Source of the DNA: Asterias rubens
Lineage: Eukaryota
Length of the DNA stretch: 64,000 nucleotides
NCBI RefSeq assembly: GCF_902459465.1
Contig: NC_047071.1
Location: 13,330,001 to 13,394,000, forward strand
Reading direction: 5' to 3'
Both the position numbers and the translations under genes were made by a program. Shown piece after piece: positions 23,130 through 43,616 of the stretch. Every line of letters begins with the position of its first letter. Positions within the stretch are counted from its first letter, which is position 1. A model generated the notes under the pieces. That model saw only the letters and a program-made list of their open reading frames with translations. It had not been told where the DNA came from and ran no database searches.

Positions 23130-23880
23130 AACAATTATCTACTGGACCAGAATTATGTGTAGTAAACCAGAATTGATAATTGTCACTGTTGACCAGAAAA
23201 CAAACATAACTGGTTGTAGTTTAACTAACAGTCATGAAGATTTTAAATGTTTCTTTTACTTATGTTGACCAGATACATGTAGCATTACTGGTTGTGGTTT
23301 GACTCTAACCATAATGGAGGATTTTAACAGTCTAACGTATTTATATAATGAATTATTGTCACTGTTGACCATACCAGATAACATAACTGGTAGTGGTTTA
23401 ACTCTAACCATAATGAGGAGTTTAACGGTTCCTTACTTAGTTATTGTCACTGTTGACCAGATAACATGACTGGTTGTGGTTTTACTCTAACCATAATGAG
23501 GAGTTTAACGGTCCCATACTTTAGTTATGTTGACCAGATAACATAACCGGCTGTGGGTTTAAGTCAATCCATAATGAGGAGTTTAACGGTCAGATACTTT
23601 AGTTATGTTGACCAGATAACATAACCGGTTGTGGTTTAACTTAAATCATTAACAGGAGTTTAGCGGTCCCATACTTTAGTTATGTTGACCAGATAACATA
23701 ACCGGTTGTGGGTTTAAGTCAATCCATAATGAGGAGTTTAACGGTCAGATACTTTAGTTATGTTGACCAGATAACATAACCGGTTGTGGTTTAACTTAAA
23801 TCATTAACAGGAGTTTAGCGGTCCCATACTTTAGTTATGTTGTCCAGATAACATAACCGGTTGTGGTTTAACTCTGACCA
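23130..23880. repeat. 77/78-bp tandem repeat (155-bp dimer) overlapping the pygopus stop codon
   Basis: TTAGTTATGTTG(A/T)CCAGATAAC recurs at 23521, 23599, 23676, 23754 and 23831; older copies decay toward 23130. Confidence 0.9.
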
Positions 23881-27447: not shown

Positions 27448-28943
27448 ATGTCATGCCAGTGCAAGCAGTGGGCTAGCCTAGCTTTGACTCCTCACTGATA
27501 GACGTTCTTACGCCCTACCATGGATGAAGGATTACCTAGAGGGCTAGAGCAGTGGGCCAGTCAGTTTGTTTACAACACCCCCCCCTCGGCCCCGCCTATC
27601 CCTTTTTACTATGTGGCTGGCAAGTGACAAGTGTAATTTATTTAGTTTCCCATGATTATTAATATTAAACACACACATCACCAATAATTATTTGTCATAA
27701 GTTGTTCCTTATTTTCTTTGTTTAACGTTTTTGTAATAACTCACCTGAGCTTAAAATGAGTCCAGGGGGGAAGGGTGTTCTGCTTTACCTTGGATGGTGA
27801 TCGGAAGAAAAGAACTGTTAACGTTCACCCACACGGAGAGTTTTGGTTGATTTTTAACTCTTAGACAGCGCCCTCCATTGTCTGCTTTTAACTCCTTTGG
27901 CTGGCGAGTGTGTGAAGACGTAGACTTGATTCAGGTCCCGTTCTCGTGCGAGAGGTCCCTAAGCATACCCGCAGTCAATATAAGTGGTCCAGAGAAACAG
28001 GTTTGGGGGTAATGCAGAGCAGTTTTCTAGCGATGGTACGGGATTTGAACTTGAGTCAAGTCTAGTGAAGATGTAGCCTTTTAGTCAAGGCGCGCCCGGC
28101 ACCCAGAGGTGCTGCCCCAGATGTCACGTATCCGCAGCTCGCGCTGTTTTTTCCGCTGCACACGCCTTGAATAAAGGCTAGTGAAGACGGTGCCCGTGTT
28201 CGGCACGGTTTTTTTACAATCTTTTGTTGTGAACTTCCTCCATGGTTGAACCATGGTTGATTCAGACAAAAGATATACTCCATGATTGAACAATCTAAAG
28301 ACATATTTCATGTTACAATCGATCGAATTAGTGTGTCAACGCCGAGGCTGAAGTAAACTAAACTGGCCATCATTCCCCGTCGTCCACGCTCATAAAGAAA
28401 GAGGTCTGAGGGGGTGGCAACTTCGATTTTGGGGGTTCGAACTATGCTCGAAGAGCTGTATGTTTATGTGATAGGCGGGGCAGGATGTCAGTCGTTGTAA
28501 TTCCAAGATTTCATTTGATTTTAATTCCTATGATTTTCCAACGTGGGCTGGTGGAGGAAGATTCAAAAGAGGGCGCTATCAGAAGTAGTTTTTACACAGT
28601 TCGCCGTATGGAGGACATAATCTCATGCCACCGACATCCAATCGTTTTGTTCCCCTTTTTGAGGGATTGCCAGAGATCTGTAAAGATTGTAGACCCTTTC
28701 TTTTGAGAAACGATCGATAGTAGGCGTACTTTATTTTACCAGTGATGTCTGTGTAGCCATGACACTAAATTAATAGTATGCATGCTTAAAGTCACCTGGA
28801 AATATAATTGTTTTTCTTTCAAACATAAGAGTATAATTATGCTTACGAACAATAAAACAATTTTTTTAGTAATTGTTTGCACGATTTATATGTTTAAAAA
28901 ATATATCAAGTTGTTTGGGGGGCTGACTCCGCCTACCCCTTTT

Positions 28944-29206
28944 GTGACGTCAATCGAGGCAGACTTTGCCTGCAATGCGTATAGCAAACACACTTGCAAA
29001 GTGCATGTACGTCCAAGTCGTGAGTTGGTACGTTTCAAAAAGTATTTTTCTGCATTCAGTAGCAATACACCTGGTCGGCATTGCCGGAAAAAAAAAAAAA
29101 AAATCTTTTTTTGAAACGTACAAACTCACGACTTGGTCCGTACATGTACTTTGCAATTGTGTTTACTCTACGCATTACAGGCAAAGTCTGCCTCGATTGA
29201 CGTCAC
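28944..29206. repeat. Inverted repeat with about 95-bp arms (MITE-like)
   Basis: GTGACGTCAATCGAGGCAGACTTTGCCTG... / ...CAGGCAAAGTCTGCCTCGATTGACGTCAC. Confidence 0.7.
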
Positions 29207-30972
29207 GAACAGCGCCCTCTCGGGTCGGGGTCTACTCTTAAATTTTGTAAATAACATAAGAACTGATTTTTTAAAACCTTAGTTAACTGTTTATTCACAT
29301 TCCACTCATCAAAACACATATTAGTGACAAAAGCTTTATTTTGAAAAAATACCACTTCCAGGTGACTTTAAGATCCACAAACGCACGGTCATCACATTAT
29401 TGCTTCCTTTAATAAACCTTTAATAATTTTTTACTTTAATAAACCCTTCCAGTGGGAGGTCACACTGGATTGTCAAAGACCAGTCTCTCTTTTGGTGTAT
29501 TCCAACATAATTATGCATTAAATAACACACCTGTGAAAACTTGAACTCAATTGGGCGTCGAAGTTGCGAGATAATAATTGAAGGGGAAAAAACACCCTTG
29601 TCGCGCACAGTGCTTTCAGATGCATTGATTTCTTTCGAGACCTCAAAATCAAAGGTCTCGAAATCAAATTCAAATACTTTAGTGAGAAATTACTTCTTTT
29701 TTAAAAACTACGCTACTTCAGAGGGAGTTGTTTCTTACAATGCTTTATGCTAACAATTATTTTGATTATTACCAATGCATGCAATGGTGTCCAGTTCTAA
29801 GTACTTATTATGTATGCTTGCCCTGGGTTGATTTGTGAGAGTAACATTTTCTTTCAACCACTGTATTGGTGCTACTATACATTGTTTCCAGTAAAAAATG
29901 ATTGAGAATCAGTTTCTCTGTATGTATAAGGAAGCTTGATTTTTTTCACAATCCGCCCCCCCCCCTTACAAAAAAGGGGGAAGCTCAGGTTCGCCGATTG
30001 ACCCCATCTGGGGCCATAAAGGTCCCCCCCCCCCCCGGATCTTGGGTGCACCATTCAGTGACCCACACGCCTACAAATACTAAGGGAATCGATGTGTGGT
30101 GAAGAGGTTTTCAACTAGTGGTTTAATCCCAACGAGGCCTGGTCCTTGATAATTTTACCGAGACGAAGTCAAAAAACATCAACACTTATGGTCAAAAAGT
30201 AAAGTAAATGTAAAAATTATAATTTTCAATGATTTCTTTCAACACAACACCCCTCCAGCTATGAAATGGTAAGGCCCAGTCAAGGCCCTCGGGTAAACAA
30301 CTCCTTATAAGGGAATGCTGTGCGCGTCGCGGGTATCGCGTGATGTGACACAACTGTCTCGGCCGTTGCTCTCGACCAATAGGAATGAAGAAACTGTCTT
30401 ATAAGCACAGGTGCAAACTCGCGTGTCACGCCCAAGTTTCAACACTTTTTACTGGTCATAAACAAAGGTTTATACACACCCACGTGACGCGCTCTCCACC
30501 AATAGGAATAGCGAAACTGTCTGAGGTATTTATGAATGTCTATTAATGGACCATTACTATAAACTCAAAATGAATAAAGTACATCACTACATACAACATA
30601 ATGCCACCAAATACAGTCATGGCAATTTTGCAGGGAAACTTCCTGGTACACCGGGGTAGAGCAAGGGTAGGTCATAATACACCACGCTTAAGTAAACGGA
30701 AAAAGCAAACCACATTTCCTGTATAGACTTTATAATGAAAAACAAACGCCTATCAAAAAATAAACAATAGGCCCTTAGGTGTTTGTAAATCTTTCATGAA
30801 CATTTGTAGTCTTCTCGACAACATTGACGTGTTTGTAGTAATTCTGGAAGGAAACCGCTCTACTGTTCCACCGTTCTACTGTAAGCTTCGCTGGCCCCCA
30901 CGAGCACTCTCCTACGAAGGCCACCGATTCCGTATTTTGTCATAGGCTCCTACTGATTGTAACTTAGCCGAC

Positions 30973-32652
30973 ATGTTTAACATTACTGATAAAACTGGGC
31001 ATGTTGTTGTCCTGCTGTTTCTCGTGTGGATGACACGCCGTCATGTTCAGGCAGAGATAGGTGTGGATACTAGACCAAAGGATGCTGCAGTTCATGAGGG
31101 AGAGAATGTAATATTCGAATGTGATCTCAGAAATGTTGATGGTTACACTATCATTTGGGCGTATGATCAGTCTGGCAGTGGGTCCACCTTGACGTATCTT
31201 ACCCGTGACAGATCTGATTATGAAGGATCTGATCAAGCAAGCTCAGAAGTTATGGAGCGCATATCTATCGTTGGTGACGTGGATGAAGAAGAGTTCTCAT
31301 TAAGGATTGAGAATGTACAAGAGTCTGATAGTGGGGAGTATTCATGCCGGTATAACCCTGCTGTTGGCGGACACCCCACTACTGCAGGTATGGCCACGCT
31401 GGTTGTGCTGGTCCCGCCCACTCTAGACTCGCTAGTATGTAGGGTAGACACGCATACGGGCACTGGCAATGCAGTTGGTGACAGGGTGGATCTTTTTTGT
31501 TCAACATCAGGAGGGAATCCACTCCCTAATATCACCATAACCAAGGAGGAAGAGATAATTGCAGATGGCAGTCAAATCAAGTCCGTTACCCATCCGTACA
31601 CGCTAATTGCTGAAGATAATGGAGTGACATTCACTTGTACAATGTCAACACCTGCCCTTGATGTACCGCGTACCTGCTCTGTTATGCCGCTCGTGATATT
31701 ACCCACTGTTACTATTAGCCCACTGTCATCTACTGTGGTAGAGGAGGGGGCTAGCATTACGCTCGACTGTAACGCTGGGGGCGTACCTAGTGTTATCGTC
31801 ACTTGGGAAGTCTATACAACTGATCCTCGAGAGGCTCTGGCATTGGATACATATTCGCTATCCAATGAGGGCCACACCCTGTATATGCAAGCCATGGAGA
31901 CTATTGTAGCGTATTGTGTTGCCAGTGTGCCGTCTGGACTGTCCAGTAATTCCACGGTGAGAATTGACGTCACGCCTCGAGAGGAGACTAACACTGAGGA
32001 GATCAACACACGGGCGTGGACCATGAACCCCAAACAGCCGTCTTCTTCCTCCTTACACGTCACGATTATCATTGTCGTAGCCGGTGTCCTGGTCGTGGGT
32101 TTCATCATTTTGATTCTGCTGATCAAACGGCAACAAAAAAAGAAAAGAAAGTCAATGATTCCCATTGACCCTAAAGTTGGATACAAAATGCGCGAGATTG
32201 AGGATGACGAGGCAGGAAGACGGAACGGAACGAAATCCAACGATGAAGAAATCGGTGGCCGAGACGCAGGAAATGTCATCCCGGAGAAATTCCCGCACGT
32301 CCCCGCAGGAGGAAGTGCTACCAGACTCGACGGACCCGAAACTGAGAAGGGCAGACCATCGCCATCATCCACGCCGCGTGGTGGCGCTGTGGATTCACCT
32401 CAAGACATGTCAGTCATCTACGCTCAACCCCAGAAGAAACCCAAACACCCAAAACATCTCGAAGTTGGATCACATGAGAACATGTATAGCACTGTTGCTG
32501 ATGGGGAGGAGGAACCAGTAGCAAGCGACTCGGGGCTACTCTATGCTGATCTTGACTTGGATAAACACGGCGGTTCTGATAAAGAAAATGAGACACAACC
32601 AGAGGGAATCCATTCAAATGAACAAACTGTTTACGCATCGATTCGTACTTAA
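30973..32652 (+). CDS. Single-exon type-I IgSF receptor A (559 aa): signal peptide, V-set, C2-type and third Ig domain, TM, cytoplasmic ITIM (LLYADL) + ITSM (TVYASI)
   Basis: Uninterrupted 1680-nt ORF. V-set hallmarks FEC..IIW..FSLRIENVQESDSGEYSC; second domain LFC..GGNPLP..AEDNGVTFTC; third LDC..G.P....W..YC; hydrophobic VTIIIVVAGVLVVGFIILILLI followed by KRQQKKKRK. Probable 5'UTR acceptor ttag|ccgacATG. Confidence 0.92.
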   Translation: MFNITDKTGHVVVLLFLVWMTRRHVQAEIGVDTRPKDAAVHEGENVIFECDLRNVDGYTIIWAYDQSGSGSTLTYLTRDRSDYEGSDQASSEVMERISIVGDVDEEEFSLRIENVQESDSGEYSCRYNPAVGGHPTTAGMATLVVLVPPTLDSLVCRVDTHTGTGNAVGDRVDLFCSTSGGNPLPNITITKEEEIIADGSQIKSVTHPYTLIAEDNGVTFTCTMSTPALDVPRTCSVMPLVILPTVTISPLSSTVVEEGASITLDCNAGGVPSVIVTWEVYTTDPREALALDTYSLSNEGHTLYMQAMETIVAYCVASVPSGLSSNSTVRIDVTPREETNTEEINTRAWTMNPKQPSSSSLHVTIIIVVAGVLVVGFIILILLIKRQQKKKRKSMIPIDPKVGYKMREIEDDEAGRRNGTKSNDEEIGGRDAGNVIPEKFPHVPAGGSATRLDGPETEKGRPSPSSTPRGGAVDSPQDMSVIYAQPQKKPKHPKHLEVGSHENMYSTVADGEEEPVASDSGLLYADLDLDKHGGSDKENETQPEGIHSNEQTVYASIRT

Positions 32653-33186
32653 ATACGGCACAACGTCGCGAGGGACTATGAAAGTCCATAAAGTAATAAC
32701 AGTTTTGACTTGGCTAGACCTTAGAGCCTTGTCATACTGGCGGCAACATTTACAGGCAACTTGGAGGCCCAATTGCAGTGCGTGCGACATGTTGGACCAC
32801 TTGTAACACATGGGTCATTTTTCGAACAATTTCTTACGATATCAAGTGGACAGACGTGTCCCAGTGAATTGTGTGTGTCTCCCCCCCCCCCCCCCCCCCC
32901 CCCATTAACATGGGCTCTAGGAGGATGATTCAAAAGAGGGCGTTATCATCTCAGAAGAAATTTGTACACATCTCCGGGGGACAGAAGTTTCTGCCGGCCA
33001 CAGCAGAACTGGTTGCCTGTTAATTGGCTTGAGTGACATAACCTTTTTGAATACCCGCGCGTTTTTAAGTGGCTCAATGCCGGGGGGGGGGAGGGGGGGT
33101 GAAGCCAAGTCACGTTTCAAAAGGGACTACTCTTTTGATTCATGGCCACGCATCAAACTACTCGTAGACACTATTGGTGATACTCA

Positions 33187-36100
33187 GAGCGTTTTCGAAT
33201 CGAAGGCTCAGGCTCAGGCTTGGGCTTCAGACTGATGCAGCCATTTTGAAGCCGCGTACGAATCGGAGGCTCCGGATCGGGCTTCGAATTTGAGGCTTCG
33301 ATTTTGGCTGAAAACAGCGCCAGGCGAAGCCTCCTCAAGAGGTGGCTTCGCCAGGCTTCATGACGTCAGATTCGGGATGATAAATCTTTTTCTTGCGGCA
33401 GCCATTAAAATCCTCGGTTACCGTTCAATAAAATTGACAAATTTGGCTCTTTTGATTGTGTTTTACTATTAATAACAACAGTCTTCACCTGATATATCAC
33501 CCATGAGAAGGCGAACAATTTGCATCAATGATATTAAGGTAAGTTTTGATATATAATGTAATTTTTTATGATAATTTACTTCGCGTTAAAAATGACGTGT
33601 GCCCATAAACTTAGTGCTGCATCTAATTCGTGAAAATTGTCTTTTGGTTTTATTCTCAACATTTACTGATGAAGATAAGCTACATTCGGGAATTATTTGA
33701 CAGGATAATATTTGTGAAAGTAGGGCCTGTCTTCTTAACTTGGTTATGGTTGATTTTTCGTTGGCAGAAAATTAAAATTCCTTGTCTGCTGATTAAAAAC
33801 GACAGTTGTTTATTATTTTTTATAATCCCAAGGCCGAGAGCTGGATAGTGATATTATTAGTTATAAATCTTGTGGTTTCGTTTAAGCTGAACCAATTACA
33901 TTGAACACTCTTGTTACTTATGAATAATATTTCGCTTTGTTCCTTTTTTTCAAGAATGTTTTTGTTGTAGGCCTACTTTTTTAATAATAATATTTCATAT
34001 TGTTTACTTCTGACTGATGATGTACCGGGTAGTAACTTATTTGAGTTTTCTGAAGGGAAATACATTTCTTGGCAACTAAAAAAAAAGGTTACATGATTAC
34101 ATAAATTTAAATATTAGCCATGAATGAATGAATGATGATACATGTACACCTGCATCAACTTATCAAGCAGAGGCTATATGGGTTAGGTGTTGAGATGGGG
34201 GGGGGGGGGGACTTTGCTAGAAAAACACCTTTTGCTTGTGGATTAAGGATTCCAACTTTTTTGTAGAAGAGGACTGGCATTCATCAACATTCTTACTTGT
34301 ATTAACTTTCATTGTACAATGTAGAGTTGGAAGAGTGACTTTGGTGTGAGGAAAACCACCCGGCCTAGGTTCAAGTCTATAGGGGCAAAAGGATACTTGA
34401 ACACTGCCCATATCTGTCAGGTACGGTATGAATCACAAAATTGGTTTTTACCCATATACACCAATGTGTGTTATATAAGCACTGTATACTCAGTACTTAC
34501 CTGAGTTTTGTGAAAACAAAAATCACAGGCAAATTACTCAGGTGGGATTCGAACCCACAACCTTTGCAATTCTAGAGCAGTTTCATGCTAAACTAGACCA
34601 CCGAGTTTGCCCAGTAGCTGAGGCAGTTTGAATCCTAAATTTTAGCAGCCGGAACTGCAAATGATATTAAAATTGCACCAGGTTACGAGTATTCAGTTTG
34701 GTTTTTACTCCGGTAAGTATTGAGTATATAGTGCAATTACCACATCGGTGTTTATGGGTTAAAACCAAAATGAATACTATAAATATCAAGGCTGTGGTAT
34801 TATTCACTCAGAAAAAGACGACGGTCTAAACCCACCCGTATACACTGTGCGTAGTGTGTAATCACACCGCACGACCCACCCGTATACACTGTCACATTGC
34901 TGAAGTAATCCGCACTCGTACCACTAACCGCATGCGGAGGCTGTGTACGGGGGCGTCGTGTCGTGCGATGTGCCGGATGTGGTTAATTTTACGCTCAGTG
35001 TACAATGTATACGGTAGTTGCGTTTTTTCGGAGTGACAATTTGACTGCCTTAGCAAGGCTTAGCAAGGCTAACCCGACATCCTTTTGAGATGTTTCCGAT
35101 AATCAGTGGTGATCTGGAGTTCGAGAGACTTCCAAGTCAATCCCCTCTTGAATGTTAACCTTTGTTTTTTATATCTAAGGGGGGGGGTAATAGAAAGAAA
35201 ACTCTCTAAACCAACATTAAATCCCAAGAGCTAAAAATCAATTTTGTTTAGATACATTGTACAATGATCACCCAAATGGTATGATAATGCTATAATTTTG
35301 CAATTTATAATGTTGAGGGCTGCGTTGATTATTTGATCATACATGTACTCAAGCATTGATTATTTGATTTTATATAACACCCAAGCCGATCCTTGCCATT
35401 TGATTGGAGGATTGTCCGTCACGTGGTAGCAAATAAAAGTACCATTGCACGCTGAGTCACTCACCGTGCTTTTTCGTTCCATCCGAAAAGTACCATTGCA
35501 CGCTGCCAGCGTGCAATGGTACTTTTCGGATGGAACGAAAAAGCTGAGTAAAAACATCACTGCGTGCGCGTGTTTGTAACGCAGCAGTGTTACTGCGAGG
35601 AATAATATTAGTAAAATTACTAATACTAGCATTCGGATTCTACAATTAAAAATTGTAGGCCTACGCTTTGTTTGTTTTGAAAGTTGTATCTTTCAATCAA
35701 AATGACAAAGATCTACTTGGTTGTTATATAAAACAAATAATGAATGTTTTTCATTCGTGCAATGGTGCGAATATGTTCGTTCGTTGAAAGCTGGAATGTT
35801 CCATTCAACTCGGCTCCGCCTCGTTGAATAGAACATTCCATCTTTCAACTCATGAACATATTCGCACCATTGCACTCATAAACATTCATTATGTGTATAA
35901 TACTCAAGCATTGACTATTTGATCATACTCATAAGATTGTATCTTCTTCTCATTTCAGTTACAAGGATCTGCAGAAAAGCATCAATGTGAGAAGCGTAAC
36001 ATGTGCTAGCCAGTTCCGCATCAAAGCGAAAGACCTGTTAGTTCATTTCAGAACAATATAAGATGTCACCAGTAGGCCTGGGCAACAAGTGAAGTTTACT

Positions 36101-37603
36101 ACTCATCTAGTGTCAAAAACATTGTAGTCACGACTTTGACACTAGTTGTGACTATTTTAAACTCCTAAGATACATTGCGGCAAGTTGTTTGCCGCAGGCC
36201 CAATCAAGTAAAATTTGTGCTAAAAGGATTGAAGTTGTAGGGAATAGGCAAGAGCGACACAATGGGAGACTTTCCAACGCTAGGTGGCAGCAGACTTACC
36301 GGGTAAACTTCCATTGTTTACGTAGTTATGAGCTTGCACATAATTCTGCGAACATGGCTTTACCCGGTAAGTCTGCTGCCACCTATCGTCCTAGAAAGTT
36401 TCCTAGTCGTGACTGTTTTTTAGTAGTCATGGTAGCACGTCGAGTAATGTGAGTAGTTGAAAAATGGTATTTGTAACTCGACAAGGCAATCAATAGTCTC
36501 CACTTCGACACTTGTCTGTCACACTAGTCGCTCAGGCTTAGTCATCAGTAGAGGAAATATCACTGGTGATTAAGCAGAAGAAACTTCACCTGTGTCGATA
36601 AAGATATAAAGCTCAATTCTAACTCTGTAAAGTAACATAAAGCAAACTGACCTGTCCTTATTTGCAATTTTTTGCTAGCAATTATTCTACAGCTGAAAAA
36701 TACAATTAGAAAAAACTTGACAATTCCGAAATACTAACCTAACAGTTGACGAAATAATTATGTTTCTTGACTTTAAAGTGGAGATCATCATAATTGCAAT
36801 GAACTTAAAAGTTGTTAAGTAACCTAACATTTTCCCAGCCTCATGGGAGAACACAAACAATCATTTATTAGCACCGTCTTTGTAATCTTAAAAAAAGTTA
36901 TTTAAACAATCAATTGCTGTAAATTGATACTTCTTTTGTTTAAAAGTAACTCAATTTATGATAAAATAAAGTTTTCATTGTTGTGCAGTATAGCTTGTAT
37001 GCAGTTTTTACTTGATAGTCAGAGTAATGTTATTTTTATTCTAAAAGAATACTATAGTTTTCAAATAACAGAACATACCTTTCGAAATTTCCCTGCTTTC
37101 CAGTTTCAATGCAAGGCATGTTGTTGACATATATTACAACAAAATAAAGCTATGTTTTCAGAACATTTTTGGTCCGTTTCGTTGTTGATGAAAACAACCA
37201 TCATTTGTTGGCTTTCACTAAAATAAGTCATTTTACAATCAAGTGAAGCTAAAAAGTGGGCTGCTCTAAGTTATTGAGGTATTTTTACAATATTAAACCA
37301 TCAGAAAGCAAATATGCGTTTGTTACAATACAAATGGTATGATTATGTGTTTTGTGGTGGTGTTATTTTTTGTTTTGTTATACAATCATTAAATAAATGC
37401 CTCGCACACAAAAAGCAGACGACGCACGTTTGTTCTCGTGCATTATTATTTCCCCCATGAAGCCTAATCCCGCCGTGAAGCCGAAGTGTTCGAAACAATT
37501 TCGTCGCCATGTTGTTTATTGTGAAGCCTGAGTCTCACTGAGCCGGAGCCTGAAAATCCCAAGCCTCAAGCCTCAAGCCTGAGCCTTCGATTCGAAAACG
37601 CTC
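33187..37603. mobile_element. 4.4-kb non-autonomous PIF/Harbinger-like DNA transposon with nested repeats
   Basis: Perfect 28-bp TIR GAGCGTTTTCGAATCGAAGGCTCAGGCT; 3-bp TSD TCA (33184-33186 and 37604-37606); interrupts a family-A MITE; no transposase ORF recognised. Confidence 0.8.
35360..35900. mobile_element. Double-hairpin non-autonomous element nested in the 4.4-kb transposon
   Basis: Perfect 38-bp arms at 35468-35505 / 35507-35544; imperfect hairpin at 35738-35891; flanked by near-identical TACTCAAGCATTGA(T/C)TATTTGAT. Confidence 0.6.
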
Positions 37604-39143
37604 TCAGACTAATTGTTAGCATAAAAACTTACTTTCTGAAGTGACGTAGATTTTGAGAAAGGGGCTATTTCTTTCTTGAAATGAAAAAGCTTCAGGTTTG
37701 ACGTCTTTTTATATTTTTTTATGCATCTGAAAGCACAAAACTGTGTGTGTTTTTTCTTTCACAATTCTTTTGCATCTTCGACGACCAATAGGCCCCCTAT
37801 GAGTCAAAGTTTGGACAGATTTACTTATTTTACCCTAAAAAGGGAAGAAATGTGCCTTCTAATATCAATATTATAAGTGTTGGCATTTACAATGACCGAT
37901 TTAAACATGCTATGTCACATTTTTGGCCGATTTGACCCCAAAATTTTGATTTAAAATTCAATAGGTATTTAGATGGGGGTCGAGAAAGTTACAAGCTTTC
38001 ATTTGAGCCATTGCTCGAAAAAGTCCGCCAATTATTAGTAGCAGTGAAATAAACTGCTCAAAATTAGTTTTTGTCGGGATCCCGACAATCACGTGACCAA
38101 TTCTTATGTGTTTTATACGAAACGTTTTAAATTGTTGTCATGGTTCCTGACCATTAAAAGTAACAGTTACACTTGTTTTCGTTAGAGCGGGTGATACTCT
38201 TTGAAATACCATTCACTCAAAAAATCTGACATAGCATCTTTAATCAACTCCTGTAACGATCTGTTTAGGCTTATGATTTTTAACTCCGATTGAAGAAAAC
38301 TCATTGCTAAATAGGTTCTCGGATAATTTCTCTGATAATTTCTTTGATTCCTTCAAAGTTAACAACGAAGTTGAAACTACATTTTTTTCGAGTGAAAACC
38401 TTTAGTGCCAAAAAGAATACTGCAGAAGAAAAACAAACAGTATACTGTAGTCGTTTTACAATGTATGTTCTCCACAAAATGCTGGTTGTAGTTCCGCTTT
38501 TTCTTGCTCATCAAAAGAAAGTATTCGTTTGAATACCAGAGGGTAAACAAAAAATGCAAACTGTCTTGTATATATCGATGCATTTTTGGGTTGTTTATAA
38601 GTAAGTGCAATATTTTGTCAATTTTTTAAATTACAAAAAATAATGATAAAGTTCTTTTAGCTGTTACAAACTGCTTCTGAACAAAAATAGGCACATGCCA
38701 TGGTCTCGGAGCAAATAAAAAGTTAATGACCTGACGTTTTTATCAAATAATACATTATTAATGGCAAAATATATCTTTACACAGCACAGCTTAATTAAAT
38801 ATATTTATCGTAGCAATTAATCTACACAGTGACTATCGGGAAACGGTTTTTATAAGACAAGCTTGACGCCATTTTGTTGAGATTGCACTTAGAGATTTAG
38901 ATTGAAAGTATATACCGTTGGTTTTTTGAACCGTTCCATTGTTTTAACCTATATAAATGTAGATTGTATACATAATGCAACAAACATGTGTAAATATAAT
39001 TTTCAAAGGGTGATCGCGTTTTTTTTTAATCCGGATCGGTTATGTCCACGCAGGAAGAATAATCCGGAATTGGAATATACAACTCTGAGAAACGTTTCTG
39101 ACAGTGACGTATCTCAGATTCAAATTTTGAGGGATAACAACTG

Positions 39144-39385
39144 TGCCCAACTTCATAGAGCTGCTTAAGCAAAAAATTTTGCTTAAGCAAAACAATCTTT
39201 GCTTTGTAAAATCAGATTACCGGCTGAGACTCCACTCAATTGTTATGCTAAGTAAACAACAGCTAAATATTAGTCACAAGCAACGTACATGGCATGAAAT
39301 TTTTGCCAGTAACATGTGTAAAATAAGCAAGCTATTTTCGTGCTCAAGCAAATATTTTGCTTAAGCAGCTCTATGAAATTGGGCC
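39144..39385. mobile_element. Harbinger-like MITE with CTG TSD, nested in an older element (about 38890-39535, related to 44110-44480)
   Basis: TIR (T/G)GCCCAA(C/T)TTCATAGAGCTGCTTAAGCAAAA; relative at 62729-62995 (CAG TSD); fragments at about 1238-1270 and 21800-21950. Confidence 0.75.
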
Positions 39386-40322
39386 CTGATATTGTTTTCC
39401 ATAACCACATAACTGCAAAGTGAAATTATTCTCAACATATTTTAAACTATCAAAAGCTGCAACATACATCTTACCAATAAAATTAAGCTTTTATGAACAT
39501 TAATTAAAAGAGTGCAAAACGTATACCTTCCTTTAAAATAGTTTGTATCAACAGTATTACAGTTTAAAAGTTATTGCTGGCATTGCTTTGCTGATTACTG
39601 AGTTATTGTTGTTTCACCCTGTAATCAATTGTAACTATGGTAACTGTCTGTTTTGATAATTTGGCATCCATTAATATGAGCTTCATGTATTGCAAACATG
39701 GCGCATAACTGATTAATGTACACTATTCTTGTTATTAACTCTTAAAGTTCAATTTCAGTCATTAAATTGTATGTATTACTTGAAATCGCTTGAACTGAAA
39801 TAAAAATGCATAATATTTTTAATTAAATTACTATGTGATCATCCTCCTTCGAGTCCGAGCATGAATCTTGAAAAAAGGCCCAACATCTCTCGGCAAATAC
39901 AACCAGGGCTCTTTTTCAGGGCCTAAGTTATTATTATAAAAAAAAACTCAACAACCCCTGTGTCACAATAGGTCAGAATGTGTACAATGTACCTCTTTTC
40001 CTTGGCTGTCAAATCTTATATTATTAAATGCCTACAAGGTTTCAATAAGACCGACGATCTTAGTGGGTTGTACCACAAATTGAATTCCTCTAAAATGTCG
40101 CATAACCCAATGTGCAGTCTAGTCTGGTACCCTGACTGCGCAAATGAGTTTTAGAACCAAACATTTTATTCTAACCGCAAGTTGTCGCAACTCTCAAAAA
40201 TGCACAGCCCCGAACCACTGTTTGCAGACGGCATCGTATGAACGGTTGTGGGCAGTTGATTCACATTACGGTTAGACCGCGTGTCCGGACGTGTCCTTGT
40301 ACTGCAATAGCCTACCAATACG

Positions 40323-40435
40323 TAGACTTGTGGACAAGTCGTTAAATCGGCCCACGCGCTGAGATAGTGGTCTCGCGAGATCACTGCTCTCGTGCCAGCG
40401 CGTGGGGCCGATTTAACGACTTGTCCACAAGTCTA
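40323..40435. mobile_element. 113-bp palindromic MITE
   Basis: TAGACTTGTGGACAAGTCGTTAAATCGGCCCACGCGCTG and its near-perfect reverse complement; TA at both ends. Confidence 0.65.
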
Positions 40436-41329
40436 ACCAATACGGTACTCATGCGGCCATACTGAGACAGGCAGGTACCGGAAAGCACGACACAACGACG
40501 CATTTCAGCTATACATGCCTACAGTCGAGATGTTGACCTATCAAACATGGAAATAGAAACAAGTTTGTAGGATTTTAAATACATGCAACATCTTGTACTC
40601 GTTGTTGACCAATAAGCACATGTTGTATTTTGTAGAGACAAGTCAAACTTTTCAAAAGAGAAGTTGTCAAGTCCCACACTCATGAAAAATGTTTGCTTGT
40701 TCATTTATTTTAATCAACATTGGTCTTAAACTGCCTTAACGTTTAAAAAAACCTTAAAATAAAAACAAATTCTCTGAAAACATGACATAATATATTTTAT
40801 TAAGGTTGGACCCCCCCCCCCTTTTCGCACCAATTGTACTTTGTTTTACTTACACATTATAAACTAGTGTTACCGAGGCTGGAATGGCTTGACCGAAATT
40901 AAAAAAATAATATTAAACCACAGAAATTTGTTCATGGAAACGGAGAGCAAATCTGTAAACACTAGAAAACCAAAGTTTTACCATATATATTTATTGGTTA
41001 TAATTATTATTGTATTCATTAAATTTTCGGTGACGTCGGCTTTCTGTTGACTTTGACGAACCGATAAAACCCTTTCTACCAGATCATTGAATTCTTCTGT
41101 GGTCAGAGGTGACGTATATATTGAGGGGGCAATGACAAATATAGGAACCGAGATATTTGTGTCACCCCCGGATTGAGACCAACCATAGGAAACAAACAAA
41201 TAGCTCAAGGTTTTAAACACAATTAAACATTCCAACTTTACGCATAGTTGAAAACAGCCGCCTCCGCAGAACAAGTTATGACAGATATTAAGTTGAGAAG
41301 ATCATTAAGTGAGTCGGCTTAGAAAGAAA

Positions 41330-41840
41330 AAGTTAGGAAAATTAAGCAGTTCACGAATAATTTACAGTTTGGAAATACAGTCCAGAAGAGATGTCAACAT
41401 TATCATCAACGAAGCTGACGAAGAGATATTGTGCACGGAAAGATGTGGACTAGGCCTACTATTACAGTTGAAGAACAACCTACAGTTTGAAAATTATATT
41501 CAGTCGAAAAAAGATATCGCCACAGAATTAAAGAAGTCGCATTAAGAGACAGTTTGGGAAAAACACAGTTGACGAAGAGATGTCGAGGAAAGAGACGAAC
41601 AACTTACAGTGTTAACAATCAATCGAGGAGAGATGTTACCACACCATAAACGAATGTCGCTTTGAGAGAACCAAACCGTTTTGAAAGAAAAACAGTTGAA
41701 GACGAAAAACTTTAGTTTTGAAAATAATATAACCAGTCGAGAAGAGATGTCACCACATCATCAAAGAAGTCGATTTTAGAGAACAGTTTGGAAGACAAAA
41801 ACAGTTGACGAAGAGATATCGTGATAAGATGTGGACTAGT
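41330..41840 (+). repeat. Degenerate tandem repeat upstream of and including the start of IgSF receptor B
   Basis: Recurring ACAGTT(T)GGAAGAC/AAAACAGTTGACGAAGAGAT blocks; AAGATGTGGACTAG occurs at both 41440 and 41826. Confidence 0.7.
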
Positions 41841-43616
41841 TTTGCAGCAGTGGTGCTGCTCGCTGCGGTGACTTTCCAATTTAAAAGTGCTGAAGCAATT
41901 ACATTGGAAGAAGGCCCTCAAAGTCAGATCTTTGCTCAAGTTGGCGAAACTGTCATCTTCAGTTGCGATTTTCGTGACGTCGGTGAGAGGACAGTTTATT
42001 GGTACTATAGGGAGGCCAGACTCTATTTGAGTAACAATAGAGTTATCTACCGGCGGGTACCGGACGCCTTGAAGTCTCGACTGTCCGTTATTGGCGATGT
42101 GAACTTAGAACAATTCAACTTGAGACTGGCAGACGTCAGGGTGTCAGACAGCGGGATTTATTTTTGCCAATATGCATTTAAAGGAGGTTTGGCTACGAAT
42201 GCTGGGAGCTCTAACCTCACAGTGTTCAGTCCACCTAGTCCCCAGTCGCCGGTGTGCAGTGTGGAGTCAGGAGCGGTTACCTACGAAGTGGGAGACACTG
42301 TGCTTCTAAAATGTGAAGCCGTAGCTGGTAACCCACCACCTCAAGTTGCTTACAGGAGAGCCATCTCAGATGAGGTCTTGGTCGGGCCCACTGCTTCTTA
42401 CATAGCATTTCAATACCAACTGCGTGCTGAAGATAATGGCATGGATTTCATCTGCGCCATGACGACCCCCGCCTTAAAGGAGGCGAGACAGTGCTCGGTA
42501 CAACCACTGAGGATTCTACCCACAGCTCTAGTCACGCCCTCATCGTCGGCCGTCTTACAAGGGGATGGAACATCTTTGTTTTGCGATGGATATGGAGAAC
42601 CGAGTATTGGTTATGGATGGTATATACAGAATACCAACACTGGGGGAAATCTCCCTCAGGATCGCTACATGGTATCCGACGATAGAACATCAGTGGTGAT
42701 TCCTGACATACAAGAAGACATCACAGTGATTTGTGTTGTTACTACACCTAATGGACTAGCGGCCAACTCAACAGCTTTGGTTATATTAAATGAACAGGCG
42801 AGTACAATGTTGAGTACAACTAAAGAACAAACGACTTTTTCGGACATTGTGTCGACTGACACAAATTCGACCGTACCGACTGAACTAAACGCTACCCAGC
42901 AGTCCACCGCCGGCTCTGAACTCAGCACCACCCGGCAGCCCATCACCTCCCCTGCAGAAGCCCCAATACCCATCACGCTAATCATCGCCACCATTTCAGC
43001 AACTCTTGTTCTATTCTTTGCCATAACAATTGTCATATTATGCTGCATGTGTCGTAGGAGAAACAAGAGGTCAATACCTCGTGAGGACTATCCAATGACC
43101 GAGCGAGGAAATACCTATGAGGAAATTCCTAATAAACCTCACAAGGAGCAGTCGAGCAACTTGGAGGCTCAAACTTCTGCAGGGCAGTCGACCAACTTGC
43201 ATCTGTCCTCACCTGCAAGTACCCCATCAGCTAACCCTGTATACGCATCCCCTAATAAGCCTAGACGTGGTGTACCTCAAACTGCAGATGCAGACTTGTT
43301 CTTCCCAAAGTCATACGTTCCTTTGTACGCAACTCCCAATCGCATCAGAAAGCCAGCGACTGATAACAAGTCTATACCGACAGACGGCTTATACGCGCAG
43401 CCCACTCCTCGTTCAAAGAAGAAACTACTGTCGACTGTATTGTGGGGGCTTGATAAGAATGGGTACAGTATTGTCAAGAGGGATGACGTTGGGGAGCCAG
43501 ACTCTGGTGTTGTGTATGCTGATTTGGAAATGAAGGCTGGTGCTTCTGGAAGCTCGAAAGACTTGGCGGCAAGTCCAGTTAAGGAACAGACAGTATACGC
43601 CCAGATTCTCTCATGA
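41829..43616 (+). CDS. Single-exon type-I IgSF receptor B (595 aa from ATG 41829), paralog of A, with S/T-rich stalk, YxxP cluster, ITIM (VVYADL) + ITSM (TVYAQI)
   Basis: Uninterrupted ORF; the track start at 41805 is TTG, and the first ATG opens a signal peptide MWTSFAAVVLLAAVTF. V-set FSC..VYW..FNLRLADVRVSDSGIYFC; C2 LKC..GNPPP..AEDNGMDFIC; third Ig LFC.GYGEP.IGY.W..IC; TM ITLIIATISATLVLFFAITIVIL then CCMCRRRNKR. Confidence 0.92.
   Translation: MWTSFAAVVLLAAVTFQFKSAEAITLEEGPQSQIFAQVGETVIFSCDFRDVGERTVYWYYREARLYLSNNRVIYRRVPDALKSRLSVIGDVNLEQFNLRLADVRVSDSGIYFCQYAFKGGLATNAGSSNLTVFSPPSPQSPVCSVESGAVTYEVGDTVLLKCEAVAGNPPPQVAYRRAISDEVLVGPTASYIAFQYQLRAEDNGMDFICAMTTPALKEARQCSVQPLRILPTALVTPSSSAVLQGDGTSLFCDGYGEPSIGYGWYIQNTNTGGNLPQDRYMVSDDRTSVVIPDIQEDITVICVVTTPNGLAANSTALVILNEQASTMLSTTKEQTTFSDIVSTDTNSTVPTELNATQQSTAGSELSTTRQPITSPAEAPIPITLIIATISATLVLFFAITIVILCCMCRRRNKRSIPREDYPMTERGNTYEEIPNKPHKEQSSNLEAQTSAGQSTNLHLSSPASTPSANPVYASPNKPRRGVPQTADADLFFPKSYVPLYATPNRIRKPATDNKSIPTDGLYAQPTPRSKKKLLSTVLWGLDKNGYSIVKRDDVGEPDSGVVYADLEMKAGASGSSKDLAASPVKEQTVYAQILS

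What the first reader, a model, noticed from the sequence alone, without database searches (positions are those of the whole stretch)
30973..43616. Tandem pair of invertebrate Ig receptors with a SIRP-alpha/PD-1-like ITIM + ITSM tail: candidate self-recognition or immune checkpoint module
Seen: two co-oriented paralogs about 9 kb apart, each with signal peptide, V, C2 and third Ig domains, an uncharged TM and a long tail. Most of the tail is unalignable, but both keep DSG-[LV][LV]YADL...EQTVYA[SQ]I at the end (A: 32536-32643, tyrosines 30 aa apart; B: 43509-43607, 27 aa apart). Established: [ILVS]xYxx[LV] is an ITIM and TxYxx[IV] an ITSM. Tandem pairs at roughly this spacing in SIRP-alpha (ITYADL/TEYASI) and PD-1 engage both SH2 domains of SHP-1/2, and SIRP-alpha also has three Ig domains. 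Inference: a possibly uncharacterised family of inhibitory receptors in an invertebrate deuterostome (phagocyte self-sensing or allorecognition). The similarity to SIRP may be convergent; adhesion or neural roles are not excluded.
Basis: partly seen in the sequence, partly recalled or inferred. Interest (0 to 1): 0.78.

Follow-up and report, generated by a model that had tools for sequence, protein, structure and literature searches.

The report
Sea-star inhibitory-type Ig receptor gene pair
Two neighbouring single-exon genes of the starfish Asterias rubens encode cell-surface immunoglobulin-type receptors whose tails carry the same two-tyrosine docking site that vertebrate "brake" receptors (SIRP-alpha, PD-1) use. 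They belong to an undescribed family found across echinoderms, and the outer tip of one of them is unusually variable, which makes it a testable candidate for self/non-self sensing.

Summary
ORF A (30973-32652, 559 aa) and ORF B (41829-43616, 595 aa) are intact, co-oriented, intronless paralogs (30% identity). Each has a signal peptide, V-set + C2-type + third Ig domain, an uncharged TM and a disordered tail. Each tail ends in DSG[LV]xYADL ... EQTVYAxI, with the tyrosines 30 and 27 residues apart.

The pair is not chance: composition-matched shuffles give P = 2e-4 and 1.3e-3. The consensus GLxYA[DE]L[DE]L-(21-32 aa)-TxYAxI recurs in 26 of 108 profile hits. Every named hit is an echinoderm: sea stars, an urchin, crinoids and a brittle star. 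Coding regions are intronless and often tandem in all four loci inspected.

The A/B duplication predates the sea-star crown. A 2.1-kb unspliced transcript-like contig covers A.

New here:
- A has a sharply bounded hypervariable block (31128-31607, V plus half of Ig2). It is 14-20% diverged from A. amurensis, against 2-5% in the flanks, and dS is six-fold higher.
- A second A. rubens haplotype shares 26 of its 40 variants with A. amurensis.
- B's V domain is nearly invariant.
- In Patiria, an ITIM/ITSM member and an ITAM-like member share 83%-identical ectodomains.

Homology to SIRP is not supported: no C1-set domains, and the ectodomain is nectin/CADM-like. SHP binding and an immune role remain inferred.

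The parts
30973..32652 (+). Gene A, single coding exon, 559 aa type I IgSF receptor
   Evidence: ORF. Pfam V-set/Ig_2/C2-set_2/Ig_3. AF2 model. 84%-identical ortholog in A. amurensis, also intronless. A 2117-nt unspliced contig in run X1 covers 30779-32865, while flanking unique DNA has zero depth.
31057..31413 (+). A: V-set domain D1 (aa 29-147)
   Evidence: Pfam V-set E = 4.8e-15; strands in the AF2 model. Against A. amurensis dS = 0.44 and dN = 0.14.
31414..31980 (+). A: Ig2 (C2-type, aa 148-240) and Ig3 (aa 241-336)
   Evidence: Pfam Ig_2 and C2-set_2, no C1-set. Invariant TPAL...CSVxPLxILP linker across the family.
31128..31607 (+). A: hypervariable block (aa 53-212: V from strand C onward plus the first two thirds of Ig2)
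   Evidence: 14-20% nucleotide divergence from A. amurensis, against 2-5% on both sides including non-coding DNA. dS 0.28-0.32 against 0.047, Fisher P = 2.6e-6. The X1 haplotype carries 34 listed variants in 31287-31573 and an 18-nt length difference in 31161-31257. 26 of 40 X1 variants equal the A. amurensis base. Window allele against X1: 27 nonsynonymous to 7 synonymous.
32053..32124 (+). A: uncharged transmembrane segment, followed by KRQQKKKRK stop-transfer
   Evidence: Sequence; AF2 helix 362-392.
32158..32190 (+). A: juxtamembrane island IPIDPKVGYKM
   Evidence: Conserved in A-clade orthologs; P400, Y404 and M406 are nearly invariant.
32413..32496 (+). A: VIYAQP (YxxP) and ENMYSTV tyrosine islands
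   Evidence: Aligned with GLYAQP and NGYSIV of B and with YAQPxKK / ENxYSxV of Patiria and Acanthaster.
32527..32559 (+). A: ITIM island DSGLLYADLDL (Y524)
32620..32643 (+). A: ITSM island EQTVYASI (Y554), 5 residues from the C-terminus
41829..43616 (+). Gene B, single coding exon, 595 aa paralog (the mechanical ORF starts at TTG 41805; first ATG is 41829)
   Evidence: ORF; Pfam. 92%-identical intronless ortholog downstream of A in A. amurensis. Held at 0.99-1.00 of sampled words in three runs.
41895..42794 (+). B: V (aa 23-133), Ig2 (134-230), Ig3 (231-322)
   Evidence: Pfam. The V domain is 108/111 identical to A. amurensis, and 41996-42235 differs at 0.8% of nucleotides, below non-coding DNA.
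42795..43052 (+). B: Ser/Thr-rich (40%) stalk and uncharged TM (42966-43052)
   Evidence: Sequence.
43110..43127 (+). B: NTYEEI (YEEI-type motif)
   Evidence: Kept in A. amurensis B; P0009 has YEII. A-clade members have E-Y-D/A-E-[IL] at the aligned place, which Asterias A has lost.
43236..43475 (+). B: three YAxP motifs (PVYASP, PLYATP, GLYAQP) and NGYSIV
   Evidence: aligned.
43500..43532 (+). B: ITIM island DSGVVYADLEM (Y563)
43584..43607 (+). B: ITSM island EQTVYAQI (Y590)

Best explanation
A and B are two anciently duplicated members of an echinoderm-wide, so far undescribed family of intronless, often tandemly arrayed type I IgSF receptors. The ectodomain is nectin/CADM-like (V-C2-C2).

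The family's hallmark is a C-terminal bipartite phosphotyrosine module, GLxYA[DE]L[DE]L - 21 to 32 residues - TxYAxI. This is an ITIM followed by an ITSM.

Proposed mechanism, inferred step by step:
1. The membrane-distal V domain binds a ligand on another cell.
2. A Src-type kinase phosphorylates the tail. B, and A-clade members outside Asterias, carry a YEEI-type docking motif that could hold such a kinase.
3. The doubly phosphorylated module engages both SH2 domains of an SHP-2/Corkscrew-type phosphatase and opens it, as the SIRP-alpha BTAM peptide and the PD-1 ITIM/ITSM pair do.
4. YAxP motifs may add Crk/Nck-type adaptors.

The output is most likely a local inhibitory or modulatory signal in cell-cell recognition.

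A and B differ in what they see. A's D1-D2 exists as deeply diverged haplotypes shared across species, which suggests a polymorphic or fast-evolving ligand (self marker or pathogen). B's V domain is under strong purifying selection, which suggests a conserved ligand.

Shown here: gene structure, domains, motif conservation, taxonomic range, the divergence pattern and transcript-like coverage of A. Inferred: phosphorylation, the SH2 partner, the direction of signalling and the cell type.
For: Genes and domains.

Organism and orthologs.

Motifs:
- Four to five tail tyrosine islands are conserved between sea-star orders, while the rest of the tail is free to vary.
- The last 60 aa are 58/60 (A) and 59/60 (B) identical between the two Asterias species.
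- Chance probability of the ordered pair is 2e-4 and 1.3e-3.
- Of the 108 profile hits of 300-1000 aa, 26 carry ITIM->ITSM at 21-32 residues and 12 more carry ITIM-ITIM. Columns are near-invariant: L(-2) 23/26, A(+1) 25/26, L(+3) 26/26 for the ITIM; T(-2), A(+1) 26/26 and I(+3) 23/26 for the ITSM.
- All named hits are echinoderms of four classes.

Similarity to validated SHP ligands:
- SIRP-alpha BTAM DITYADLNLP-x-HTEYASIQTS, tyrosines 24 apart, activates Shp2 when phosphorylated (PMC5589908).
- PD-1 ITSM is EQTEYATIVFP, against EQTVYASI here; PZR has VIYAQL and VVYADI (PMC11085718).
- PD-1 Y223/Y248 are 25 apart (PMC7078208 abstract).
- SHP and SHIP homologs exist even in a cnidarian (PMC9546547).

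Gene structure: the coding region is intronless, with tandem IgSF neighbours, in A. amurensis, Patiria and Anneissia; it is also intronless in Diadema.

Phylogeny: the A clade and B clade are sisters, each with valvatid and forcipulatid members (support 97/95 and 100/100).

Transcription of A.

Selection:
-.
- All five indels between the A orthologs are in frame.

Immune-type family trait: Patiria P0004 (ITIM/ITSM) and P0006 (EYDDV...YAAV-x11-YLEL) are 83% identical over ectodomain residues 1-340 and have unrelated tails.
Against: No experiment shows phosphorylation or SH2 binding. ITIM/ITSM consensus matches are short, and SHP-2 docking receptors such as SIRP-alpha/SHPS-1, PZR and PECAM-1 also act in adhesion, migration and neurons, so 'inhibitory immune' does not follow from the motif.

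Tissue of expression is unknown. The run labels are coded, X1 is only guessed to be RNA, and no reads were laid on B.

Outside the hypervariable block, gene A has dN/dS near 1 between the two Asterias species (41 N: 13 S). This could mean relaxed constraint.

The polymorphism evidence rests on one assembled contig and one interspecific comparison. A paralogous copy or gene conversion could mimic allelic lineages.

B's 595-aa product is not on record in the public gene collection.

An SHP ortholog in A. rubens was not checked directly.
Confidence: 0.6

Rival explanations
1. They are cell-adhesion or neural IgCAMs of the nectin/CADM/Kirrel type. In this reading the tail tyrosines serve adhesion-dependent or growth-factor-type SHP-2 signalling (as in PZR, PECAM-1 or neuronal SHPS-1), with no role in immunity or self-recognition.
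For: The V-C2-C2 ectodomain gives nectin, CADM, Necl-4, fasciclin-3, DIP/IgLON, SYG and Robo as best structural and sequence matches. NCBI's automatic names for relatives are 'cell adhesion molecule 2-like', 'kin of IRRE-like', 'nephrin-like'. B's V domain is highly conserved, as expected for a fixed adhesion partner.
Against: The C-termini (-IRT, -ILS) are not the afadin- or PDZ-binding ends of nectins or CADMs, and no FERM-binding box was recognised. The family shows lineage-specific expansions, tandem arrays, a hyperpolymorphic D1-D2 in A and a paired ITIM / ITAM-like pattern in Patiria. These are typical of immune-type receptor families, not of conserved CAM orthologs.
Confidence: 0.25
2. 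The ITIM/ITSM matches are chance occurrences of loose consensus patterns in tyrosine-containing disordered tails, and carry no function.
For: The single patterns are common: any ITIM arises in 14-33% and any ITSM in 2-5% of shuffled tails.
Against: The ordered, correctly spaced pair arises in only 0.02-0.13% of shuffles. It is kept, with extended flanks (DSGLxYADLDL, EQTVYAxI), in both paralogs and across four echinoderm classes, while the surrounding tail is unalignable.
Confidence: 0.02
3. A (and possibly B) is a decaying retrocopy. In this reading the intronless structure, dN/dS near 1 outside the block, and the high divergence reflect loss of constraint rather than diversifying or balancing selection.
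For: The CDS is intronless. Between the Asterias species, dN/dS is 0.98 outside the block and above 1 in Ig2, Ig3 and the tail of A. The forcipulatid A clade sits on a long branch (0.74). Asterias A has lost the E-Y-x-E-I motif kept in other A-clade tails.
Against: The intronless CDS is ancestral to the whole family. The ORF is intact in three haplotypes. All five indels are in frame (chance about 0.4%). All Ig core residues and all tail motif islands are kept. A transcript-like contig covers the gene. Elevated dS confined to a sharp block is not what decay produces.
Confidence: 0.08
4. The hypervariable block of A is not balanced allelic variation. It would instead be a gene-conversion tract from an unsampled paralog, or a contig from a near-identical second locus.
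For: The block has sharp boundaries. X1 is an assembled contig from a run of guessed type. The chromosome carries further family members.
Against: Outside the block X1 differs from the window by about 1%, including the UTRs, whereas A. amurensis differs by 2-5%. This fits an allele of the same locus. No second copy exists in the window or in the syntenic A. amurensis locus. Conversion among alleles would still be a diversification mechanism focused on D1-D2.
Confidence: 0.2

Closest known systems
SIRP-alpha / SHPS-1 (vertebrate)
   Same: Three Ig domains with an N-terminal V, an uncharged TM, and a long tail. The tail module xxYADLxL - about 24 aa - TxYASI, when doubly phosphorylated, binds and activates Shp2/Shp1 (BTAM peptide, PMC5589908). 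SIRP-alpha also has paired non-inhibitory relatives (general knowledge).
   Different: Domains 2-3 of SIRP are C1-set, and none is detected here. No sequence-level affinity was found: SIRP is absent from the PDB sequence hits and ranks 20-30 among generic Foldseek hits. SIRP-alpha has two ITIM/ITSM pairs, these have one. The sea-star genes are intronless. Homology is not shown, and tail similarity may be convergent.
PD-1 and PZR/MPZL1 tails
   Same: PD-1 has ITIM + ITSM 25 residues apart, with ITSM EQTEYATI against EQTVYASI here. The PZR motifs VIYAQL and VVYADI resemble VIYAQP and VVYADL here.
   Different: Both have a single V domain and short tails, and there is no relationship in the ectodomain.
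Nectin / Necl (CADM) / PVR family and insect fasciclin-3
   Same: V-C2-C2 ectodomain architecture, CD80-like C2-set match in domain 2, and the best structure and feature matches.
   Different: No afadin/PDZ-binding C-terminus or 4.1/FERM box. Only generic Ig-level sequence similarity. Intronless, with lineage-specific expansion.
Hydractinia Alr family (invertebrate histocompatibility complex)
   Same: Clustered IgSF genes with V-set D1, some with ITIM and some with ITAM tails. The polymorphic membrane-distal domains determine allorecognition (PMC9546547).
   Different: A different phylum, a different domain set (Alr has an Fn3-like ECS fold), spliced multi-exon genes, and no conserved ITIM-ITSM pair. 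Here polymorphism is shown only for one gene and from few haplotypes.
Vertebrate paired receptor families (KIR, LILR, SIRP-alpha/beta, PILR)
   Same: In Patiria, P0004 (ITIM/ITSM tail) and P0006 (ITAM-like tail) have 83%-identical ectodomains and unrelated TM and tails.
   Different: The non-inhibitory partner has its own tyrosine motifs and an uncharged TM, rather than a charged TM that recruits an ITAM adaptor. This pattern was not seen for the Asterias A/B pair itself, which is 30% identical.

Membership tests
ITIM/ITSM-bearing inhibitory IgSF receptor (functional class) | Type I membrane protein with Ig ectodomain and uncharged TM | tested here: met
ITIM/ITSM-bearing inhibitory IgSF receptor (functional class) | Cytoplasmic [ILVS]xYxx[ILV] plus TxYxx[IV] at a spacing that tandem SH2 domains can span, and evolutionarily conserved | tested here: met
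   Y-Y spacing is 30 (A) and 27 (B), and 21-32 in 26 relatives. Shuffle P = 2e-4 and 1.3e-3.
ITIM/ITSM-bearing inhibitory IgSF receptor (functional class) | Tyrosine phosphorylation and recruitment of SHP-1/2 or SHIP, with an inhibitory output | not testable with these tools
   Needs phosphopeptide pull-down and a cell assay.
SIRP family | V-set followed by two C1-set domains | tested here: not met
   Pfam at E <= 0.1 gives Ig_2, C2-set_2, Ig_3 and I-set, with no C1-set.
SIRP family | Sequence or structural affinity to SIRP above other IgSF | tested here: not met
   No SIRP among the 60 best listed PDB hits with the single sequence or the profile. Foldseek ranks 20 and 30, with TMt 0.41-0.48, no better than nectin, IgLON or DIP.
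SIRP family | CD47 binding | not testable with these tools
   No binding assay is available here, and a CD47 ortholog in echinoderms was not sought.
Nectin / CADM (Necl) family | V-C2-C2(I) ectodomain | tested here: met
Nectin / CADM (Necl) family | Cytoplasmic afadin-binding C-terminus (nectins), or FERM-binding box plus type II PDZ ligand (CADMs); these are the definitions from general knowledge | tested here: not met
   The C-termini are ...YASIRT and ...YAQILS, and the family consensus is TxYAxI[RK][TS]. Neither motif is present in the alignment.
Siglec family | V-set with the essential F-strand arginine and a non-canonical intrasheet disulfide plus an extra inter-domain Cys (general knowledge) | tested here: not met
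   The canonical B-F cysteines C50 and C125 are nearly invariant. R126 after the F-strand Cys is not conserved: B has Q and P0003 has L.
Polymorphic allorecognition / histocompatibility determinant | High allelic polymorphism concentrated in the membrane-distal domain, with allelic lineages older than the species | tested here: inconclusive
   Gene A block 31128-31607 has dS 0.28-0.32 against 0.047. The X1 haplotype shares 26 of 40 variants with A. amurensis, and 27 N to 7 S separate the two A. rubens haplotypes. Only three haplotypes were seen.
Polymorphic allorecognition / histocompatibility determinant | Co-segregation of alleles with graft or cell rejection outcome | not testable with these tools
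   Needs genetics and transplantation.

The most novel reading that the evidence does not exclude
Gene A (perhaps with further members of the cluster on this chromosome) may be a determinant of sea-star allorecognition. In this reading it is a polymorphic, probably homophilic or allele-matched Ig receptor. Its D1-D2 haplotypes would be kept by balancing selection across species. Its ITIM-ITSM tail would deliver an SHP-mediated 'self, do not attack' signal to coelomocytes, opposed by ITAM-like relatives. That would be an NK-like missing-self system in an echinoderm.
Probability: 0.12. Interest if true: 0.9.

Novelty: new member of a known kind. Interest (0 to 1): 0.66.

Why it matters
Graft rejection and allorecognition in sea stars have long been described, and a 2022 study of Patiria pectinifera (PMC9763293) still names no gene for it. 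More broadly, it is unsettled how far the ITIM/ITSM-SHP 'brake' logic of vertebrate immune checkpoints reaches back in deuterostomes.

This locus offers concrete, short, intronless genes with a conserved bipartite SHP-type docking module across four echinoderm classes. It also offers a gene with a sharply bounded, trans-specifically shared hypervariable ligand-binding region next to a conserved paralog, and in Patiria a paired ITIM / ITAM-like arrangement.

That makes several questions directly testable:
- Does the module bind echinoderm SHP?
- Are the genes coelomocyte-expressed?
- Do A haplotypes predict allogeneic reactions?

If the answer is only 'adhesion receptor with SHP-2 docking', it is still a new echinoderm-specific IgSF family that public annotation currently names inconsistently (Dscam2, peroxidasin, nephrin-like, PTK7-like, CADM2-like).

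Tried and rejected
1. Search with the tail alone (residues 470-559, E <= 10) to find the same tail in other phyla. Only 25 candidates came back, and only the window's protein, its A. amurensis ortholog and one unnamed relative matched. This is uninformative about non-echinoderms.
2. phmmer of the last 50 aa against PDB chains: no match.
3. Foldseek of the whole model against PDB and Swiss-Prot gave only generic three-Ig matches at TMt about 0.3-0.55. The flexible interdomain angles and the disordered tail limit this comparison, so no family assignment was drawn.
4. Literature searches found no description of this family. The terms were sea star / echinoderm / sea urchin with ITIM, ITSM, V-set and immunoglobulin superfamily, and Asterias coelomocyte transcriptome. 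The library lacks most subscription journals, so absence is weak evidence.
5. Earlier notes of this scan: nothing at this place. Two unchecked notes exist on other ITIM/ITSM receptor clusters in the same genome.
6. Identity of the unnamed ENA/Logan hits. The sample files were too large for DNA. By BLAST they are 25-47% identical to echinoderm members, so the taxon is left open.
7. A 5' UTR intron of A. The X1 contig ends at 30779 with 19 unmatched letters, next to a possible acceptor (cccttag|g). The same point is a 240-bp indel relative to A. amurensis, so this was not resolved.
8. B's exact product is not on record in the gene collection.
9. Rejected readings: chance motifs, pseudogene/retrocopy decay, and SIRP orthology (see rivals and membership tests).

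Full report
**What is in the sequence**

Between 30973 and 43616 the + strand carries the only two long ORFs of the region apart from an antisense shadow ORF. A runs 30973-32652 (559 aa). B runs to 43616. The mechanical ORF for B starts at a TTG (41805), and the first ATG (41829) gives 595 aa beginning MWTSFAAVVLL, a normal signal peptide.

The two proteins align end to end at 30% identity (E = 2e-59). tblastn finds no third copy in the window. Pfam finds V-set, Ig_2/CD80-like C2-set and Ig_3 in both, and no C1-set.

An AlphaFold model built on ten relatives shows:
- three Ig domains (30-147, 155-237, 245-334; pLDDT mostly 80-94);
- a TM helix (362-392);
- a fully disordered tail.

The TM segments are uncharged and are followed by basic stop-transfer runs. 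B has a 40% Ser/Thr stalk.

**Organism and gene structure**

The window's protein A sits on a 20,453,796-bp contig that also carries Asterias rubens RefSeq proteins, so the window is A. rubens. An unchecked note of this scan says the same.

The A. amurensis ortholog of A is 84% identical. Its locus (L001) carries A and B orthologs in the same order and orientation, each as one uninterrupted ORF.

Relatives in Patiria miniata, Diadema antillarum and the crinoid Anneissia japonica are likewise encoded by a CDS exactly 3 x (aa + 1) long. In Patiria and Anneissia a second co-oriented IgSF gene lies a few kb away. An intronless coding region and tandem arrangement are therefore family traits, not a recent retrocopy of Asterias.

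**Transcription**

Logan contigs of four runs were laid on 28600-34500.
- Run X1 (labelled RNA by guess) has one 2117-nt contig covering 30779-31161 and 31257-32865. That is the ORF plus about 200 nt on each side, with no internal joint.
- Run X3 has a 2043-nt contig covering 30964-32949.
- Unique flanking stretches (30570-30766, and 33722-34115 in X1) have zero depth.

This is what an unspliced mRNA of about 2.1 kb would give. It is not proof, because the run type is guessed.

Its exact product is not on record in the public gene collection.

**The tail module is real and conserved**

In composition-preserving shuffles, an ITIM followed 18-32 residues later by an ITSM arises in 0.02% (A) and 0.13% (B) of tails.

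The alignment of ten sea-star relatives shows islands of conservation in an otherwise unalignable tail:
- IPIDPKxGYKM next to the membrane (A clade);
- an E-Y-x-E-[IL] motif, which is NTYEEI in B and is lost in Asterias A;
- one to three YAxP motifs;
- ENxYSxV;
- DSGLxYADL[DE]L;
- EQTVYAxI[RL][TS] at the C-terminus.

Between the two Asterias species the last 60 residues are 58/60 (A) and 59/60 (B) identical.

A profile search of 1.84 billion representatives gave 230 hits at E <= 1e-30. Among the 108 listed hits of 300-1000 aa:
- 26 carry ITIM->ITSM with 21-32 residues between the tyrosines;
- 12 more carry ITIM-ITIM at 20-29;
- the columns are almost invariant (GLxYA[DE]L[DE]L and TxYAxI).

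Every hit that has a public name is an echinoderm:
- Asteroidea: Asterias, Patiria, Acanthaster;
- Echinoidea: Diadema;
- Crinoidea: Anneissia, Antedon;
- Ophiuroidea: Amphiura.

Unnamed metagenome-derived hits are 25-47% identical to these, and their taxon is open. Whether the family exists outside echinoderms was not settled, because only the best 150 hits are visible.

**Comparison with validated SHP ligands**

- The SIRP-alpha BTAM peptide DITYADLNLPKGKKPAPQAAEPNNHTEYASIQTS, tyrosines 24 apart, activates Shp2 when phosphorylated by Src (PMC5589908).
- PD-1 uses FSVDYGELDFQ and EQTEYATIVFP; PZR uses VIYAQL and VVYADI (PMC11085718).
- PD-1's tyrosines are Y223 and Y248 (PMC7078208).

The sea-star module (SGLLYADLDLD - 30 - EQTVYASI; SGVVYADLEMK - 27 - EQTVYAQI) matches these at every specificity position. 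SHP and SHIP homologs occur even in a cnidarian (PMC9546547). An SHP-2/Corkscrew-type partner in sea stars is therefore expected, though this is an inference and was not checked in this genome.

The mechanism I commit to is bidentate recruitment and opening of a tandem-SH2 phosphatase after Src-type phosphorylation. The YEEI-type and YAxP motifs are possible kinase and adaptor docks. All of these steps are inferred.

**What it is not**

SIRP kinship fails the defining test of C1-set domains. SIRP is no closer than nectin, Necl-4, DIP, IgLON or MAG by structure, with TMt 0.3-0.55 for all, and it is absent from the sequence hits.

The ectodomain type is nectin/CADM/fasciclin-3-like. However, the tails lack the afadin/PDZ or FERM motifs that define those families.

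Siglec features are also absent: the B-F disulfide is canonical and there is no conserved F-strand arginine.

NCBI's automatic names for relatives contradict one another. They include Dscam2, peroxidasin homolog, nephrin-like, PTK7-like, kin of IRRE-like and CADM2-like. This fits a family with no described ortholog.

**History of the pair**

In a maximum-likelihood tree of 25 family members, A and B fall in one sea-star clade (support 99/100) that splits into two:
- an A clade (97/95): Asterias A, three Acanthaster genes and two Patiria genes;
- a B clade (100/100): Asterias B, Patiria P0014 and one unnamed member.

The duplication therefore predates the split of forcipulatid and valvatid sea stars. 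Other subfamilies group with urchin, brittle-star and crinoid members, so the family is older than the classes.

**Selection (new)**

Non-coding DNA around the genes differs by about 2-8% between A. rubens and A. amurensis.

Gene B is conserved. Overall dN/dS is 0.38, the V domain is 108/111 identical, and 41996-42235 differs at only 0.8% of nucleotides.

Gene A behaves differently:
- A sharply bounded block, 31128-31607 (aa 53-212), differs at 14-20% of nucleotides. It is flanked by 2-5% on both sides.
- Synonymous divergence in the gap-free part of the block is 0.28, against 0.047 in the rest of the gene (Fisher P = 2.6e-6). dN is 0.15 against 0.046.
- The five indels are all in frame.

The same block is where the second A. 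rubens haplotype (X1) departs from the window:
- 34 listed variants lie in 31287-31573.
- The stretch 31161-31257 falls below the 95% laying threshold, with an 18-nt length difference.
- Only about 13 differences lie in the remaining 1.3 kb.
- Of the 40 listed X1 variants, 26 are the A. amurensis base. This is far more than independent mutation would give.

The haplotype lineages of the block are therefore older than the species.

Between the two A. rubens haplotypes, codons 96-201 show 27 nonsynonymous and 7 synonymous differences (dN/dS 1.29). The replacements and indels fall in these regions, judged against the model's strands:
- the C-C' and C''-D regions and the F-G loop of the V domain;
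- the A-B and C'-E regions of Ig2.

These include the CDR-equivalent loops and the edge of the GFCC'C'' sheet.

This is the pattern expected for long-term balancing or diversifying selection on a ligand-binding face. Gene conversion from an unsampled paralog, or a second locus, remains possible, since only three haplotypes were seen. Outside the block A evolves at dN/dS near 1, so some relaxation cannot be excluded, but the motif islands and the reading frame are kept.

**A paired-receptor pattern in the family**

Patiria P0004 (ITIM/ITSM tail) and P0006 are 83% identical over ectodomain residues 1-340, and the alignment stops at the stalk. P0006 has an unrelated tail with EYDDV ... YAAV-x11-YLEL. 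I read this as ITAM-like, with low confidence, because V replaces L/I in the first half.

Near-identical ectodomains on opposite signalling tails are the hallmark of vertebrate paired immune receptors. Two unchecked notes of this scan report further ITIM/ITSM and ITAM-like receptor clusters elsewhere in this genome.

**Verdict**

The genes are a real, conserved, apparently undescribed family of ITIM-ITSM IgSF receptors of echinoderms. They are not SIRP homologs, and their function is not demonstrated.

The most likely mechanism is SHP-type phosphatase recruitment in cell-cell recognition (confidence about 0.6). An immune or self-recognition role is favoured by the polymorphism of A, the expansions and the paired pattern, but an adhesion or neural role is not excluded (about 0.25).

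The most novel reading not excluded is that A is a sea-star allorecognition determinant (about 0.12).

Noticed in passing
P0004 and P0006 (Patiria miniata, same 48.5-Mb contig; L002 holds P0004): The ectodomains are 83% identical over residues 1-340, but the TM and tails are unrelated. P0004 ends in the ITIM/ITSM pair. P0006 has EYDDV...YAAV-x11-YLEL (ITAM-like). This is a paired inhibitory/activating-type arrangement. P0013 and P0095 have the same SAYAAV/SEYLEL tail type.
   Followed up: partly
window 33187-33538 and 34327-34424: A GT..AG joint (33536 -> 34323, skipping 786 nt) is seen at very high contig depth in three runs (3264, 786, 222). A tRNA-like Rfam hit lies just downstream (34534-34607, minus strand). 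This is probably a repeated or SINE-related element, or a highly expressed spliced RNA, lying between genes A and B.
   Followed up: no
window 33184-37634: About 4.4 kb between A and B has no counterpart in the syntenic A. amurensis locus, where the A-B spacing is 4.85 kb against 9.2 kb here. It looks like an insertion of repeat-rich DNA in A. rubens.
   Followed up: no
window 30776-30779 / L001 9567-9805: There is a 240-bp indel 195 bp upstream of A's ATG between the two Asterias species. The X1 contig ends at the same point with 19 unmatched letters, next to a possible splice acceptor (cccttag|g). Whether this is a 5' UTR intron or an indel allele was not resolved.
   Followed up: partly
window 23831-24313 (-): A 160-aa ORF has a Pro/Gly/His-rich stretch and a C-terminal PHD finger (Pfam PF00628, E = 2.4e-8). 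It looks like the last exon of a Pygopus-type gene; that name comes from memory, not from a test.
   Followed up: partly
window 20760-20820 (+), 34534-34607 (-), 54878-54945 (-): Three weak tRNA-model hits (36-41 bits) were found. They are likely tRNA-derived SINE copies rather than tRNA genes.
   Followed up: no
window 41829-43616: Gene B's 595-aa product is not on record in the public gene collection, and the protein search did not return it. Its A. amurensis ortholog is a called gene. B may be unannotated or modelled differently in A. rubens.
   Followed up: partly
A. rubens 20.45-Mb contig (outside the window): Further family members lie on the same chromosome: XP_033634662 ('kin of IRRE-like protein 1', tail LTYAEL...TLYAKLK) and XP_033634688 ('cell adhesion molecule 2-like'). 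This suggests a larger cluster.
   Followed up: no
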